Below, one piece after another: positions 26,516-38,500 of a stretch of 64,000 bases of DNA (positions are counted from its first letter, which is position 1; each line of letters begins with the position of its first letter). The translations under genes and the position numbers were made by a program. The notes below the pieces were generated by a model. It was not told the DNA's origin. It saw only the letters and a list, made by a program, of their open reading frames with translations, and did no database searches. This DNA is from Phallusia mammillata (Eukaryota). The stretch is taken from the NCBI GenBank assembly GCA_965637545.1, contig OZ281494.1:13950001-14014000 (forward strand), given 5' to 3'.

Positions 26516-29500
26516 TTATTTCGATGGCAAATTGGATTTATTATCCTGACTTTCCTGTAAGTTTCCCTCCACACTAGACAAAGCAACCATTGGTGTGGTA
26601 TCACTTGGTGTTATTTGTGCCTGAGTTGGCATAGTTTGTATTCCAGATTGCGGGTTAACTTGTAAAGTTAAGGATTGTTGTGTGGTATTGCGCATGGCAA
26701 CCTGTAACACATGAACAAATTGATGCTACTATTACATAATTATACAACAAAAACTATTGGACACAGCATAAAGTTGTTGTACCTCAGAAATACATAGTAA
26801 CTGTAACTACATTATTATGAAAAGTTTACACTTGTTTGAAAAGTTGTTTGTGGTGTAACAATGCACTAAGCACCAATTTCACCAACTTAACAAGCCTCCA
26901 AAAATGTCTAGAGCAATGAGCAAATTAATTGACCTGTTGTGAGATAAGCTGTGGGTGAACCTTCATCGCGGCGGCAGCAGCAGATGGTTGGTTGCTGATG
27001 GCAACCACTGGAGGTCTCTGCATTGCCACTGGGGTTGAAGCAACAATCATCTGCTGGGGTAGAGATGGGCTTTGGTTGCTACTTGCTATGGCATGTAGTC
27101 GAGACTGTATGGCAGAAAATTAAATTTAATGCATTTGAACCTAACATGTCCAAGGTACCGTAAGACTTACTCTGGGTGTTGACTGCATCTGTTGTATTTG
27201 CGGGGACATTAGTCTTTGTTGGGGCATTAAACTGGATGCTGATACGATAGTAGTGCCAGCTGACAGGGGAAGTTGTGCTAATTGAGGTGAAGATGATAGC
27301 TGCACAAAAGAATGGATAATGTTCTTAAATACCAAAGTAGAGCCAAGCAAAATACTGATTGTGGGCAATACCAGTTAAGTAAAACATACCTGTTGAGAAC
27401 GTGGAATGAGTGTGTGACGAATAGTGGTGTTTGAAGCAGGGGCAGTTGGAGTTTGCAGCAGTTTGGTAACAGTAAGTGTAACTGGTGCCTGTAATACATT
27501 AACAACCACCATTAGGTATAGCTTAGACTGGTAAAGGTCGATGTGAGCAAAGCTCAGGCAATCAGACAGAGCTAATACAAACTTTCCACATTCTGATCAG
27601 ATTGTATTTATCATCACTTTGCCTGGCTTACAAATAGTGTTAAATCCAGACAACTAAATTCACACAGAACGTTTAAATAGTAATGTCCCTACAAACCTTT
27701 GAAGTTTGTGGCCTTCTTTTCTGTTGTGCAACAATCTGACTAAACATTTCAGCTTGTATTTGTGGTGTCATCTTTACAGCAGTACCACCACCAGACACCA
27801 ACTGATGAGAAGCCACAGTTGCATAAACAGTTTTTGGCTGCTTTGCTGCAATCATCTAACCATGAAAAGAAATATATTTAGGAAATAACTTTTGTGACAG
27901 GTTTTACAGGAAGCAGCAATGGTATTTTTGAAAAAGCACATGACTAAAATATTATAACTATCTATGAGCATTGGACTTAATCATGCCCAATAACATTTTT
28001 CTTTATTAAGATTAATTGTCCATCAGATCTCATCAAATTATATTTTTACCTGTCTTGGTTGCTGACGTTTCATCAACTGTTGCAACTGAGTTCCAGTGAC
28101 AGTGCCCTAAAAACAAGTTGCAAGCAATTTTAAACACATGTTACTATTGGTGTCACAAGGATAACCTTACCTGACTCCCAGATACAATCATTTGCTTGGC
28201 AGAACTGGAACTTGCAGCATTAAAATCTGACAAACTCATTGCTGAAAAAAAAATCAATATTAGAGTGTGTGTCTGGTGAAACATTAGTTTCTGTGCAAAG
28301 GGCTGTTTTGTATTCCCATAGACCAATCAATTACTATTATTGCATGTAACACAAAGCCATTGCCTTGTTAGACTAGTGACAACTAGATATTTGGGCCTAT
28401 GGTTGCAAATGAAAACAAAATTCCCTGTGAATAACTTTAGTATCGACCTGTCACATGTGCAAATTTGAACCAAAGAATGTCGCGTTGGGCAAAAAAGTGA
28501 GTAAAAAAGACTTAAGCGATGTGTTCTCAAGGGTACACATAAAATAGATTTACCAAAAAAGTAATCATCAAAATTTTTTTGAAAGTTGAATTTTAGGTTG
28601 AAAACATAAAAACATGTGAAGCTTCACCTGCTGCAAGATTGGTGACAGGAACAGTGATGGGAAGTGGTTTGCTTGTTGTGATTTGTTCACTTGCTTGTTG
28701 GGCCGCAAGTGTCCTCACTCGCTGGGCCTGAACTTGTGCCTGCATTGGTGCAATTTGGACCTACAAGTAAAAAAGTTTAGCAGCGTTTATATCACTTTTG
28801 AAGCTATGTAAAATACCCAGCATGAAAAATGTGTAGTTCATAGCACTTTATTTTGTTACCTGAGGGCGTTGCTGGACAGTTTTTATTGGTCGCTTCATAA
28901 TCATTTCAAGCTCCTGTTGTGTGAAAGCTCTTGCCATCTTGGCAACCTAAAAAACAATACTTTGATGCTGAGAGGTGGTACAGAAATAAAAGCAGCATAA
29001 TCTGTGCCATAGACGTGTCTTTAAGACACCTTTTTCAAGAAACAACACAGCTACCCCTTTTTGAGACTTAGGTGGTCAGATCAATATCCCATACCTGGAC
29101 TTTCTTTCCACCAGAAACAATGGTGCCAGTAATGTCCTGCTGCTGAGGCTGCTGCTGTTGTTGCTGTTGTGTAACACGCAGTTGTTGAACCGACTGAAAC
29201 ATTTTTTCAGAATTTTATTGGCATGAAAGTTACAGCACACAAACAAACAGCTACCTGCTGTTGCTGTTTGGCTGGTGTGGTTTGAAGAACCTGCTGCTTT
29301 TGTACTTGGTGTATCTGTTGCATTGAAGTCAGTTTCTGCACTTGAGTGCCACCTGCTAAATCGACAACACAAGGCACTTCACCCTCAAACTCAGAAAAAA
29401 TCCCCATGCTAACCAATGAAACTTTGCCACAATGGCTACTTTAAACGAGATTTTATATTGTTAACATACTTCTTGGAGGGTAGGTAACGGTCGATCTAGT

Positions 29501-35500: not shown

Positions 35501-38500
35501 TCCTCCCTGGTGTAGAATATCTCATCTTCCTCCACATCCATCCTTCGCTCCTCTTCTTCCTTGAGCAGGATAAGATGCTGAAGTTGCCAATCCTGTTTTG
35601 ATTTCTCAACCTGATCCTGTATAAACATTGTATGGAATATGTTCAGTGTTTTACGACACAAGCAGTAAGTTGTATATGGAGGCAATCTGCAACACTACAT
35701 TTCACTTTAATATTGGATATTTTATGTAAAGAATGCCAAGACATGATGCAGTGTCACTACCAGAATGGCCAATTCCAACATTAAAGCTTTCACAGTTACC
35801 ATAATCGAGAGTGGGCAACGACAAACTACTGGTAAGTTAAAATCCAGGTTGGAGTGTCAAGTAAAGTTGTTCTTGCACTACGAGGTCTGTCATGCATAAA
35901 TCAACACACAGATACGGAAAGCACAAGCCTTAATTTCCCTGACATGATCAACACAAGATGCCATGGACTGTGACACCTCATGCAAGTGTAGACAGGTCCA
36001 CAAAATACAGTAAAAATACACAAACAGGTACCTCTGCCATCTTCAGTTCAAGGTCGTTCATCTCCTCGGCAGTGATTTCCAAGTAGTTAAGTGCATATTT
36101 TTCGATTGGATTAAGCTCCTCGTATATTGTCTTAAGCTCCTCCTCATACTTAGATCCCTTGGGCAGTTTGAACTTGCTCTCTGGAAATCATGAAATTATT
36201 ATGCTATAAAATGATGATGTTTTTAATTTTGCACATCTTTGGCAAGCAAAATATTTTATCTTTTTGGTTATTAATGTTAATTTTAAAGCATCAATGGAAT
36301 GTAAAAAAATTAGTATTTTCCCATACCTGTGTCATCCACATCATCTTCAGTTTTCTCTTCAGCTTCAGTAAACTCTTCCATAACTGCATCCTATAACAAA
36401 ATAAATTTCCTTATGGCAACAATTCCAAAAAAAACAAAGTTTGTGAAAGTCTAGCACAGGCCTCAGAGACATGGGTGTCTTCAACACTATCAGACATATG
36501 CTTGTCAATGCTCATCATGGGCAAAATACTGTTTGATAACTTGATAAGGCACAGAAAGACAACACAAATTTTATACCTGTTCTTGTTTAAGCAACTTTGC
36601 AGCAGCTGCATCTTCTTTATCCTCAGTCTCCAAAAGAGCCTCTTCCAAATTTTCTTCACTCTCATCCACATCTGCATCTGCAGAAGTCTGAACAAAAATA
36701 CATGAAAGTAACAACTATAAATTGGTAATTGATATGAATATATGGAAGTATTTGTAAATAAGGAACCGTCAGGATTCAAGTGTCAAAAGATCACCATAGT
36801 GAAATACACAGTAAGAAATATTTCTTCATCATAGGTTTAAATCAATGGTTAAGGTAGCAAACAGGAAAAATTAATTGTTTTTACTATACCTCTGGTTCAA
36901 TCTTGGATGCTTCAATGGCTTTCTGGCGTGCTGTAAGGGGGCGTTGCTGGGGTTCGGTCAATTCCTCAAGACCAGATGGCTCTTCAAATAGGTCCTTGAT
37001 GGCTTGCTGTGAAATAGATGATATGTTTTAGATACCGGAGATGTTTCACAATAATTATTTTATGACACAGGTCTTTGTGTTCAAATGTCCCATATACTGG
37101 TTTTGTTGTTGTTTTAAGACCAATGTATTTATATTGTCCCATATTCCACTAAGAAGCACAGCACCACGACACTGCCTCCTAACGATGCCAGGAAATGGCC
37201 ACGATTTCGCACCATTAATCGATCGTTACAACACAAGCAGTTTGCAACGGAGATACCAAGAAGGTGCACCATGAAAAATTTATTACCTCAAGAAACCAAT
37301 TTTTGTTTACTAAATCAAGTTTCCTTTTTTTATCTCATAAACAACTATATTTCATACACACATGTTTGAAAAATGCAGTTGTAAAGCTCCCTCCTTCGAT
37401 TGCAAGATTTCCTAAAAGCCTCTTTTGGTTAGCTTTTTTCAGGATATTTTCCTCAACAGTCCTTTCACTTATCAACCGATAAATGTGGACGTCCCTTGTC
37501 TGGCCGATCCGGTGACACCTGAGCAACACAGGTGGCTCTGACACTTACAAATATCAAACATGGGTGACCGTAATAAAACTGAAATTCAGCAATATCGCTA
37601 TGAGGACTTCTTCATTGTGCCACAGGGTTGCATGAAAATGCATCTAGATTGCTACATTACATAAAATTACAAAATTCACTACTTTATCTAACCATGTCTA
37701 TTATGAGTTGTATTAAGTTGTACTACATGCAAGCAAATAATTTAAACTTTACCTCTATCATGTGTGATTAGACAACATTAACAGGGACAACCCCTTGAGT
37801 GGAACAGATTGAACTCGGCTCTTTCGTCATCATTATCTCAGTTTCATTTTCATACAAATGTACTAAAACAGAAGCCAACCTGTCTTGTGCTTGAGCATCC
37901 ATGGTGGGATTCCAATCACTGTCATAAAATACCACAGTATCGGCACCTGTTAAATTCACACCAATGCCACCACTCCTGGTCGAAAGGATGAAACAGAAAA
38001 TCCGTGGGTCGTTGTTGAAGCGTTCCATTCGAGCCTAAAGCATACAAGTTTGATTAGAATTGCATTTTGTAAACAGTTTTGTTACCAAGGCATTAGTTAT
38101 GTCTCAGTAGTGCTAGTTTGTCGTCATCTACATTCAGGTTGACTGGAGCAGATTGTTGTCATCACAGACATTGATACATAATATACAATGAATTTGGTTT
38201 ATTATTTACCATACGCTGTTCGATATGAGTCGATCCATCCAAGCGAAGGTACCGGTAGCCATGATAACTAAGAAATGCCTCCAAGATGTCTAGCACCCGT
38301 GTCATCTGAGTGAAGATCAGTATGCGGTGTTTCTCAGCCCAAAACCGCCGAAGCAACACACTTAGAATTTGCAGCTTGCCTGTAAAAAAATTCAGTGTTT
38401 AGAATCCTATGTTTGCTTTAGTGTGTGCTTCCTTGGTATATGCCTCCAACCAGTATACAAAACTGACAATCTACACCTAAATTTACTTTGTATTGATAAA

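What the first reader, a model, noticed from the sequence alone, without database searches (positions are those of the whole stretch)
26516..35616. One gene encodes both SRCAP-like and EP400-like C-termini through a composite-exon switch, as in Drosophila dom-A/dom-B
Seen: after YTREDGENQ a consensus donor CAG|GTGAGC (35488/35487, phase 0) lies inside a 1.76-kb open exon. Reading through gives an acidic, AT-hook-bearing tail. Splicing to the phase-0 acceptor at 32355 gives YTREDGENQ|[24 protein letters not shown], which matches the EP400 continuity TYTREDA...LWTPPTPPQDDSDIYLDSVMCLMY, followed by SANT and Q-rich exons. Established: Drosophila domino makes DOM-A (p400-like, TIP60 complex) and DOM-B (SRCAP-like) by alternative splicing; vertebrates use two genes. 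Inference: if this is an invertebrate chordate, the switch is the pre-duplication state that was split into SRCAP and EP400.
Basis: partly seen in the sequence, partly recalled or inferred. Interest (0 to 1): 0.75.

Follow-up and report, generated by a model that had tools for sequence, protein, structure and literature searches.

The report
Two-tailed domino gene in a sea squirt
In the sea squirt Phallusia mammillata, one chromatin-remodeller gene makes an EP400-like protein or a SRCAP/DOM-B-like protein by splicing at, or reading through, a donor site inside one exon; proteins from many animal phyla diverge at the same residue, so vertebrates probably split an old two-isoform gene into SRCAP and EP400.

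Summary
The minus-strand exon 35616-35488 ends at a consensus phase-0 donor. Reading through it gives a 544-codon tail with a stop at 33855-33853. Spliced RNA contigs from four studies show both outcomes: co-linear read-through, and splicing 35488->33260. No direct 35488->32355 joint was seen.

The window is Phallusia mammillata, a tunicate. Its deposited 2620-aa protein CAB3266557.1 is the spliced form and maps at about 100% from 49655 to 26519. The spliced form is EP400/DOM-A-like, with the WxPPTPPQD segment, a SANT domain and a Q-rich end. The read-through tail is conserved in ascidians and carries AT-hook-like motifs. It has no detectable sequence homology to the human SRCAP tail.

Clavelina has the same donor, tail, microexon and downstream exons. 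In database proteins from molluscs, annelid, brachiopod, echinoderm, arthropods and tunicates, 62 B-type and 36 A-type proteins diverge at this residue, and 49 of the 62 B tails start with Val (GTN).

Caveats: the 3' 16.45 kb of the gene is tandemly repeated about 2.6 times. A second locus elsewhere in the genome could not be excluded. This is a new member of a known kind, with real evolutionary value.

The parts
36032..49655 (-). Common 5' part of the gene: start codon at 49655, HSA domain, split Snf2 ATPase, up to the exon 36180-36032 that precedes the switch exon.
   Evidence: P0030 (CAB3266557.1) maps at about 100% from 49655. HSA domain at E 1.5e-15. RNA joints 36576/36389, 36327/36180 and 36031/35615. 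Exon 36180-36032 matches human SRCAP 2296-2336 and EP400 2150-2173.
35488..35616 (-). Shared part of the composite switch exon: 43 codons, phase 0 at both ends, ending ...[12 protein letters not shown].
   Evidence: RNA contigs cover 35488-35615 with 0 mismatches and stop at 35488. 70-78% identical to Clavelina and Ciona.
35486..35487 (-). Internal 5' splice site GT (CAG|GTGAGC). When it is not used it is read as the first codon (Val) of the tail.
   Evidence: The joint 35488->33260 appears in 4 runs. The same CAG|GTGAAT is found in Clavelina. 49 of 62 B-type tails in other animals start with Val.
33853..35487 (-). Read-through (B-type) tail: 544 codons plus the stop at 33855-33853. It has a basic start, an RG run, acidic stretches, the motifs RGRGRPK and SGRPRKRN, and the conserved end ...[15 protein letters not shown].
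   Evidence: ORF. Co-linear RNA contigs run from 35517 to 33235, 33299, 33556 or 33649. tblastn to Clavelina gives E 9e-75. Ascidian relatives at 40-48% identity.
33556..33852 (-). 3' UTR of the read-through mRNA (minimum extent). ATTAAA lies at 33837-33832. The true 3' end was not determined.
   Evidence: Contigs. Hexamer scan.
33425..33600 (-). Conserved RNA hairpin between the tail stop and the microexon. It has three segments, and the third can pair with the first or the second. Its role is unknown; it may regulate the switch.
   Evidence: z -2.8 and -3.3. The same segments occur in Clavelina with an A-U to G-C change on both sides. No Rfam match.
33225..33260 (-). 36-nt microexon ([12 protein letters not shown]), flanked by ag| and |gtaagt. 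It is the first A-type-specific exon.
   Evidence: Joints 35488->33260 and 33225->32355 in 4 runs. Present in P0030, in Ciona proteins, and as Clavelina L001 16696-16731.
32205..32355 (-). A-type exon [24 protein letters not shown]...; an EP400-specific conserved segment.
   Evidence: Human EP400 2247-2294 at E 1.2e-10, with no SRCAP hit. RNA joints. Vertebrate hits are all EP400.
31056..31900 (-). Three A-type exons (31900-31727, 31643-31519, 31283-31056) that include the SANT/Myb-like domain.
   Evidence: RNA joints. Myb_DNA-bind_6 at 24.6 bits against a cutoff of 22.9. Clavelina counterpart at E 5.8e-38.
26516..30842 (-). Remaining A-type exons (Q-, S- and T-rich C-terminal region) and the stop codon at 26518-26516.
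   Evidence: tblastn of P0030 residues 1937-2620. A loose end joins 31056 to 30833.
1..25838 (-). Tandem copies B (25838-9386) and C (9385-1, cut by the window end) of the 3' 16.45 kb of the gene. Each has an intact switch exon, tail ORF and microexon. Both carry a 21-nt in-frame deletion and a 12-nt insertion in upstream exons.
   Evidence: RNA contigs are copy-A type at the indels.

Best explanation
This is the single domino/SRCAP/EP400-type (SWR1-family) remodeller gene of the ascidian Phallusia mammillata. Its pre-mRNA has a composite exon. There are two outcomes.

(1) The strong internal donor at 35488 is used. The exon is joined to a 36-nt microexon and then to about 20 downstream exons. 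The product is a 2620-aa A-type protein with the WxPPTPPQD segment, a SANT domain and a Q-rich end, as in EP400 and DOM-A.

(2) The donor is ignored. The exon runs on for 544 codons to its own stop and 3' UTR. The product is a B-type protein of about 2250 aa by my count (1702 common residues plus 544). It lacks SANT and Q-rich parts and carries a basic, RG-rich, acidic tail with AT-hook-like motifs, as in DOM-B and SRCAP.

Shown here: both RNA forms, the splice junctions, the conservation of both coding routes in another ascidian, and the identical divergence point in many phyla.

Inferred:
- The choice is a competition between splicing at the internal donor and 3'-end formation downstream of the tail.
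- The two proteins seed a TIP60/NuA4-type complex and a SWR1-type complex, as in flies.
- The vertebrate ancestor inherited this two-isoform gene, and after duplication EP400 kept the spliced route and SRCAP the read-through route.
For: Sequence: donor, open frame, acceptors and microexon.

RNA, four runs from four studies:
- Joints 35488->33260 and 33225->32355, both with GT..AG.
- Co-linear contigs from 35517 into and beyond the tail.
- Contig depths of the same order for the three paths (X1: 337.9 shared, 108.8 read-through, 204-227 spliced; X8: 105.3, 64.6, 55.1).
- Depth 0 in the introns 31985-32181, 32379-32575 and 36713-36900.

Identity: P0030 (CAB3266557.1, Phallusia mammillata) maps at about 100% from 49655 to 26519 and contains the microexon.

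A-type homology: EP400 at E 1.2e-10; SANT domain; vertebrate hits exclusively EP400, with ...TYTREDAYNK + 15 aa + [11 protein letters not shown] in Xenopus.

B-type tail: conserved in ascidians. The Clavelina locus has the same donor, tail, microexon and A-type exons in the same order.

Cross-phylum: 62 B-type and 36 A-type proteins diverge at the same residue. 49 of 62 B tails start with Val. The K+R fraction of the first 30 residues is 0.30 for B against 0.009 for A. AT-hook-like motifs occur in 21 of 62 B tails against 0 of 36 A tails, and vertebrate SRCAP tails have 1-3 of them. A/B pairs from one contig have identical upstream sequence in Mytilus, Brassicogethes, Dendroctonus and Hypothenemus.

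Literature: DOM-A/DOM-B define NuA4-like and SWR1-like complexes, and alternative C-termini have been noted only in arthropods (PMC7239659).
Against: - The runs are only guessed to be RNA. Their spliced contigs show that they are, but contigs cannot show RNA ends, strand or true abundance.
- No single record links the promoter to the tail end.
- The poly(A) site of the read-through form was not found. ATTAAA lies at 33837, yet contigs run at least 200-300 nt further.
- The tail has no Pfam family and no detectable similarity to full-length human SRCAP, even as a profile.
- Two runs carry the copy-B/C letter at 34815, so some tail RNA could come from the tandem copies or from alleles.
- No protein evidence.
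- The genome outside the window was not searched for a second locus.
- That SRCAP and EP400 are products of the vertebrate genome duplications rests on my own knowledge of the 16p11.2/12q24 paralogy. It was not tested here.
Confidence: 0.85

Rival explanations
1. The read-through RNA is only intron retention or unprocessed pre-mRNA. The long open frame is not translated, and the gene makes only the EP400-like protein.
For: Only the spliced form is deposited for Phallusia, and all five Ciona RefSeq isoforms are A-type. RNA ends were not seen.
Against: - A 544-codon frame is kept open in AT-rich DNA.
- The tail is conserved at protein level in Clavelina (E 9e-75) and in other ascidian sequences down to the last 20 residues.
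- Other introns of the same gene have depth 0 in the same runs, while the tail has exon-like depth.
- B-type proteins diverge at the same point in many phyla.
Confidence: 0.05
2. The tail-containing transcripts come from the promoterless tandem copies B/C (or from a separate transcription unit), not from alternative processing of the full-length gene's transcript.
For: Copies B and C keep intact tail ORFs. Runs X1 and X17 show the B/C letter G at 34815. One contig breaks next to the A/B difference at 33555. Clavelina annotators called the 3' halves as genes of their own.
Against: - The shared-exon contigs are copy-A type (T at 35518, no 21-nt deletion, no 12-nt insertion). They end exactly at 35488, which requires two successors of the copy-A 31-mer. 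This is my inference from the contig ends.
- X5 and X8 tails are copy-A type at 34815.
- X1 is copy-A type at 33555, so 34815 looks like a polymorphism.
Confidence: 0.07
3. The switch is real but arose independently in tunicates and arthropods (convergence), and vertebrate SRCAP and EP400 do not descend from the two isoforms.
For: The eLife digest calls the fly and vertebrate solutions convergent. B-type tails are not alignable between phyla or with human SRCAP.
Against: - The divergence point is the same residue, with a phase-0 donor read as Val, in at least seven phyla.
- The 12-residue piece before WxPPTPP is present in all A-type proteins, including vertebrate EP400 (15 residues).
- A basic run and KRGRP-type hooks are shared by B-type tails and vertebrate SRCAP.
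Confidence: 0.1

Closest known systems
[quoted passage not shown]
   Same: One gene and a common N-terminus through the ATPase. One C-terminus has SANT plus a Q-rich region, the other has neither. The B-specific coding sequence lies upstream of the A-specific exons (fly exon 11 against exons 12-14). Dipteran B-type proteins (Rhagoletis, Musca, Anopheles) and A-type proteins (Culex, Culicoides) diverge at the residue that aligns with 35488.
   Different: D. melanogaster itself was not among the sequences retrieved. The tails are not alignable between fly and ascidian. The ascidian gene is followed by tandem copies of its 3' half. Complex membership was not tested in ascidians.
Human/vertebrate EP400 (p400), the TIP60 complex scaffold
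   Same: The A-type route matches EP400 2247-2294 (E 1.2e-10) and includes a SANT domain and a Q-rich end. Xenopus EP400 reads ...TYTREDAYNK, then 15 residues ending EIMP, then [11 protein letters not shown].
   Different: EP400 is a separate gene with no known SRCAP-like alternative tail. The EP400_N domain (PF15790), seen in many invertebrate and vertebrate hits, is not listed for the ascidian proteins.
Human/vertebrate SRCAP
   Same: Similarity holds up to the exon before the switch (SRCAP 2296-2336). After that comes a basic cluster, and the long low-complexity tail has no SANT domain. Its KRKRGRPPK-type AT hooks resemble the hooks found in B-type tails.
   Different: No detectable sequence homology between the ascidian tail, or its profile, and full-length human SRCAP. 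The (F/L)TYxRED motif of the shared exon is lost in vertebrate SRCAP.
Partition of alternative isoforms between duplicates after gene or genome duplication (subfunctionalisation of splice forms)
   Same: A single two-isoform gene in the sister group of vertebrates, and two one-isoform genes in vertebrates.
   Different: I found no paper in the searchable library that reports this for SRCAP/EP400. The duplication history was not tested here.

Membership tests
SWR1/SRCAP/EP400/Domino subfamily of Snf2 remodellers | N-terminal HSA domain | tested here: met
   PF07529 at E 1.5e-15 in window 48780-48520.
SWR1/SRCAP/EP400/Domino subfamily of Snf2 remodellers | Split Snf2 ATPase (SNF2_N plus Helicase_C with a long insertion) | tested here: met
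   P0030 carries PF00176 and PF00271 and maps at about 100% to the window. The best relatives are named helicase domino, SRCAP or p400.
EP400 / DOM-A-type C-terminus | Conserved WxPPTPPQD...Y.D segment directly after the switch | tested here: met
   Human EP400 2247-2294 at E 1.2e-10, with only EP400 chains hit. All 36 A-type proteins have it, since the PP[TS]PP motif defined the class.
EP400 / DOM-A-type C-terminus | SANT/Myb-like domain followed by a Q-rich region | tested here: met
   PF13921 at 24.6 bits against a cutoff of 22.9, in exon 31283-31056. Q-rich exons are read.
EP400 / DOM-A-type C-terminus | Scaffold of a TIP60/NuA4-type acetyltransferase complex | not testable with these tools
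   Needs isoform-specific purification.
SRCAP / DOM-B-type C-terminus | No SANT domain and no Q-rich region; ends in its own terminal exon upstream of the A-type exons | tested here: met
   No Pfam family in the tail. Stop at 33855-33853, upstream of the microexon.
SRCAP / DOM-B-type C-terminus | Diverges from the A-type at the same residue as B-type proteins of flies and other animals; starts with Val and a basic run | tested here: met
   62 B-type proteins, 49 of which start with Val; K+R fraction 0.30 in the first 30 residues. The window tail starts [11 protein letters not shown].
SRCAP / DOM-B-type C-terminus | AT hooks | tested here: inconclusive
   Two pattern matches ([15 protein letters not shown]). 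The second is conserved in all ascidian tails. There is no Pfam AT_hook hit, and DNA binding was not tested.
SRCAP / DOM-B-type C-terminus | Sequence homology of the tail to the vertebrate SRCAP tail | tested here: not met
   phmmer and a 10-sequence profile against PDB, which holds full-length human SRCAP (3230 aa), gave only RG-repeat hits.
Composite-exon switch (internal 5' splice site against read-through and own 3' end) | Both the spliced and the read-through RNA exist | tested here: met
   Joints and co-linear contigs in 4 runs from 4 studies.
Composite-exon switch (internal 5' splice site against read-through and own 3' end) | A poly(A) site of its own downstream of the tail stop | tested here: inconclusive
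   ATTAAA at 33837, but contigs run on to 33649, 33556 or 33235. Contigs cannot show ends.
Pre-duplication single-gene state | No separate SRCAP-type or EP400-type locus elsewhere in the genome | not testable with these tools
   Only the window is available. Indirect evidence: one Phallusia protein and one Ciona gene (5 isoforms) among the hits. The scan's notes for this genome hold nothing under these names, which is not evidence either way.

The most novel reading that the evidence does not exclude
The composite-exon switch is not a fly or arthropod peculiarity and not a convergence. It is the ancestral state for bilaterians. The same phase-0 donor, the same 12-residue microexon-encoded piece and the same two kinds of tail are kept from molluscs to tunicates. 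Vertebrate SRCAP and EP400 are then the two isoforms of this one gene, partitioned between duplicates: EP400 kept the donor and lost the tail, and SRCAP fixed the read-through and lost the SANT/Q exons. The conserved three-segment hairpin between the tail stop and the microexon may be part of the machinery that sets the isoform ratio.
Probability: 0.6. Interest if true: 0.65.

Novelty: new member of a known kind. Interest (0 to 1): 0.55.

Why it matters
How animals divide H2A.Z deposition (SWR1/SRCAP type) and H4/H2A acetylation (NuA4/TIP60-EP400 type) between complexes is usually told as three separate solutions: two genes in yeast, two paralogues in vertebrates, two splice forms in flies. 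The fly case is described as convergent.

An RNA-supported two-tail gene in the sister group of vertebrates, with the same switch point in many phyla, turns this into one history. An old isoform switch was later resolved into two genes. That gives a clean, datable example of isoform partitioning after genome duplication.

It also explains why database names for the invertebrate gene alternate between SRCAP, p400 and domino. It points to an unannotated B-type isoform in Ciona and Phallusia. And it offers ascidian embryos as a chordate system for testing isoform-specific functions.

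Tried and rejected
- Tail against PDB, as a single sequence and as a 10-sequence profile: only Sm-D1-type RG repeats and no SRCAP.
- The 43-aa shared exon alone against PDB: no hit.
- Pfam on the tail and on several A-type pieces: nothing except Myb/SANT and HSA.
- Rfam on the switch region and on the whole window: nothing at gathering score, and only a chance miRNA-family match in a palindromic repeat.
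- A global DNA alignment of the stop-to-microexon interval between Phallusia and Clavelina did not line up the hairpin. I compared the segments by eye and by folding instead.
- The 30-letter loose ends at 33808, 31820, 32787, 33163 and 33199 are not in the window. I considered a splice donor at 33808 and rejected it because there is no GT.
- I considered that the contig start at 35517 reflects only the A/B-copy difference at 35518. I rejected this as the sole cause, because the copy-A shared-exon contig itself ends at 35488.
- I considered an assembly artefact for the tandem repeat. It is unlikely, since an independent assembly of Clavelina has the same tandem 3' halves.
- Direct retrieval of D. 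melanogaster DOM-A/B failed because of the length window of the protein search. Other Diptera served instead.

Full report
**1. What is in the sequence**

On the minus strand an exon starts at 35616, after tatacag, in phase 0. It encodes 43 residues ending ...[12 protein letters not shown], and it is followed by CAG|GTGAGC with the cut between 35488 and 35487. The frame stays open for 544 more codons, to a stop at 33855-33853.

The window is 37.4% GC, so a random codon is a stop about 6.7% of the time. A stop-free run of that length then has a probability near 4e-17 (my estimate). The next longest stop-free stretch on this strand outside the three copies of this exon is 205 aa.

The tail begins [11 protein letters not shown]. 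It contains an RG run ending RGRGRPK, several acidic stretches, a second hook-like motif SGRPRKRN, and the end ...[15 protein letters not shown].

Downstream, an acceptor (tttag|) precedes an exon starting at 32355, [24 protein letters not shown]. That exon matches human EP400 residues 2247-2294 at E 1.2e-10 and matches no SRCAP chain. Further exons carry a SANT/Myb-like domain (PF13921, above its cutoff) and Q-rich sequence. The 5' part of the gene has an HSA domain.

**2. RNA evidence**

The index found 20 public runs from six studies that hold this stretch. Fourteen have transcriptome-sized contig sets and hold about half of the sampled words, which is the exonic share.

I laid contigs of four runs from four studies on 31000-36900. 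All introns are spliced out with GT..AG. The intron bins 31985-32181, 32379-32575 and 36713-36900 have depth 0 in all four runs. These runs are therefore RNA, although their records do not say so.

All four runs show a joint 35488->33260 and a joint 33225->32355. A direct 35488->32355 joint was not seen.

All four runs also hold a contig co-linear with the genome from 35517 through the whole tail, ending at 33235, 33299, 33556 or 33649. Depths are of the same order as the spliced path:

| Run | Shared exon | Read-through | Spliced |
|---|---|---|---|
| X1 | 337.9 | 108.8 | 204-227 |
| X8 | 105.3 | 64.6 | 55.1 |

The tool warns that contig depth is a poor measure, so I use it only to say "not a trace".

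The shared-exon contig stops exactly at 35488, and the read-through contig begins 30 letters upstream. For 31-letter-word contigs, this is what one word with two successors gives (inference).

**3. Which organism and which copy**

The best relatives of the tail are ascidian: Clavelina lepadiformis and Ciona. The protein CAB3266557.1 / A0A6F9DSY4 of Phallusia mammillata (2620 aa, named 'Helicase SRCAP') maps at about 100% identity from 49655 to 26519, and it includes the microexon. The window is therefore Phallusia mammillata or something indistinguishable from it. The spliced A-type product is already deposited, under a name that fits the other isoform better.

The window also contains a tandem repeat. 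Positions 1-25838 equal 16454-42266 at 99.4%, with a period of about 16,450 bp. The 3' half of the gene, from the exon at about 42007 to the last exon, is therefore present about 2.6 times. Another note of this scan (s1-375459) says the same.

Copies B and C differ from copy A in two upstream exons. They have a 21-nt in-frame deletion that removes YEELNPI, a stretch conserved in Ciona and Clavelina, and a 12-nt insertion. They also differ at single letters. The RNA contigs and the deposited protein are copy-A type at all of these sites. The exception is 34815, where two runs show the B/C letter. Both isoforms are thus made, at least mainly, from the full-length copy A.

**4. A second ascidian has the same anatomy**

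The Clavelina locus (L001) has, in order:
- the shared exon ending ...EIFYTREGNQ with CAG|GTGAAT;
- an open tail ending ...NVFESFASLLQS (tblastn E 9e-75);
- a 36-nt microexon MFVSDISGEPMP with ag| and |gtaagt;
- the LWLPPTPPRD exon, the SANT exons (E 5.8e-38) and Q-rich exons;
- the start of another 3'-half copy.

Ciona savignyi H2YBN3 and five Ciona intestinalis RefSeq isoforms take the spliced route with the 12 extra residues. An older Ciona model reads through the donor (Q|VRKK...). The tail is conserved among ascidians in blocks (LLWTEYGxETAGYL, [27 protein letters not shown], [13 protein letters not shown]) at 40-48% overall identity. This argues for a translated, selected sequence.

**5. 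Is the tail 'SRCAP-like'?**

Not by sequence homology. A search of 1.84 billion representatives found only 20 hits. The real ones are all tunicate-like fragments. Neither the tail nor a 10-sequence profile finds full-length human SRCAP in PDB.

It is SRCAP/DOM-B-like by position and make-up. Human SRCAP (2296-2336) and EP400 (2150-2173) both still align with the exon before the switch. After that, only EP400 follows the spliced route. Vertebrate SRCAP instead continues with an acidic stretch and a basic cluster, and later carries KRKRGRPPK hooks.

**6. The same switch in other phyla**

A region-restricted search returned 120 domino/SRCAP/p400 proteins. I anchored them on the 43-residue exon. 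They fall into two classes that part at the same residue.
- 36 continue with 12 residues and WxPPTPP (A-type).
- 62 continue with something else (B-type).

Of the B-type tails, 49 start with Val, as expected if a phase-0 GT donor is read through. Most of the others are offsets of my projection. Their first 30 residues are 30% K+R, against 0.9% in the A-type. Hook-like motifs occur in 21 of 62 B tails and in 0 of 36 A tails.

B-type proteins come from Diptera, beetles, Hymenoptera, Odonata, Orthoptera, scorpion, gastropods, bivalves, octopus, an annelid, a brachiopod, a sea cucumber and tunicates. A-type proteins come from the same range plus Nematostella.

Where both classes come from one species and one contig, the upstream sequence is identical (Mytilus, Brassicogethes, Dendroctonus, Hypothenemus). 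The Leptinotarsa and Arion pairs also share it. These pairs are therefore isoforms, not paralogues.

**7. Literature**

DOM-A (SANT, Q-rich, TIP60/NuA4-like complex) and DOM-B (SWR1-like complex) are established in flies. The same paper notes alternative C-termini in bee, wasp, ant, beetle and spider, and limits the idea to arthropods. Its digest speaks of convergent evolution with the two vertebrate genes (PMC7239659). The likeness of p400 to DOM-A and of SRCAP to DOM-B was remarked on earlier (bioRxiv 052746). I found nothing on tunicates, other deuterostomes or lophotrochozoans, and nothing on isoform partitioning for this gene pair.

**8. Mechanism and its status**

Shown: two RNA routes from one exon, and conservation of both coding routes.

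Inferred:
- The choice is between use of the strong internal donor and 3'-end formation after the tail.
- The two proteins seed different complexes, as in flies.
- Vertebrates partitioned the two routes between duplicates.

The 3' end of the read-through RNA is open. ATTAAA lies 16 nt after the stop, but contigs continue for at least 200-300 nt and in two runs up to the microexon.

Between the stop and the microexon lies a hairpin conserved in both ascidians. Its third segment can pair with either of two upstream segments. One A-U pair has changed to G-C on both sides in Clavelina, and the shuffle z-scores are about -3. It may bear on the choice, but two species are too few to say.

**9. Limits**

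- Read laying, the look-up of sequencing runs and the representative search allow one call each, and all three were used.
- Contigs cannot show RNA ends, strand or rare forms.
- The rest of the genome could not be searched.
- D. melanogaster proteins themselves were not retrieved.
Exons were searched one by one by reference, and the deposited protein P0030 served as the spliced reference.

**10. Verdict**

The finding is real and its interpretation is essentially right, with the microexon correction and the caveats above. It is a new member of a known kind (dom-A/dom-B-type switch). It adds evidence that the switch is ancestral rather than arthropod-specific.

Noticed in passing
window 1-42266 (period about 16,450 bp); Clavelina L001 10001-26251: The 3' half of the gene is tandemly repeated about 2.6 times at 98.9-99.4% identity. 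Copies B and C carry a 21-nt in-frame deletion (36105-36125 in copy A, which removes the conserved YEELNPI) and a 12-nt insertion. Clavelina lepadiformis also has at least two near-identical 3'-half gene models about 15 kb apart, so the tandem arrangement is shared by two ascidians and is unlikely to be an assembly artefact.
   Followed up: partly
window 33600-33425 (-); L001 16478-16580 (+): A conserved three-segment hairpin lies between the tail stop and the microexon. Segment 3 (CAUGCCAUCCAAAAUGCAUUC) can pair with segment 1 or segment 2. An A-U to G-C change has occurred on both sides in Clavelina. Fold z-scores are -2.8 and -3.3. There is no Rfam family. In Clavelina the loop holds AAUAAA.
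   Followed up: partly
window 33808 and 31820: Reproducible low-depth RNA contigs (three studies) leave the genome sequence at 33808, which is 45 nt past the tail stop with no GT there, and enter exon 31900-31727 only at 31820. The attached sequences are not in the window.
   Followed up: partly
window about 32690-33200 (intron between the microexon and exon 32355): A palindromic repeat-like element is covered by RNA contigs that run on into unrelated sequence, with a joint 32708/32761 carrying 8 other letters. It looks like a dispersed repeat expressed from elsewhere, and it is the only (chance-level) Rfam match in the region.
   Followed up: no
database entries CAB3266557.1 (Phallusia), XP_018666728-31, XP_009858051, XP_078482946 (Ciona): The deposited Phallusia protein is named 'Helicase SRCAP' although it is the EP400/DOM-A-like isoform. 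All Ciona RefSeq isoforms retrieved are A-type, so the read-through isoform appears to be unannotated in Ciona.
   Followed up: partly
protein P0017 (107 aa, representative library): A fragment reads ...LFTYTREDAYNM, then VRGKPRA... for about 30 residues, then ...EYVFDADDDHTEIMP. It looks like a vertebrate-type EP400 model read through a short in-frame intron at the same switch position. That would mean EP400 keeps the donor there. The organism is unknown.
   Followed up: no
window 36327-36389: A 63-nt exon lies between 36576 and 36180. It is supported by RNA joints in four runs and by P0030 residues 1588-1608.
   Followed up: yes
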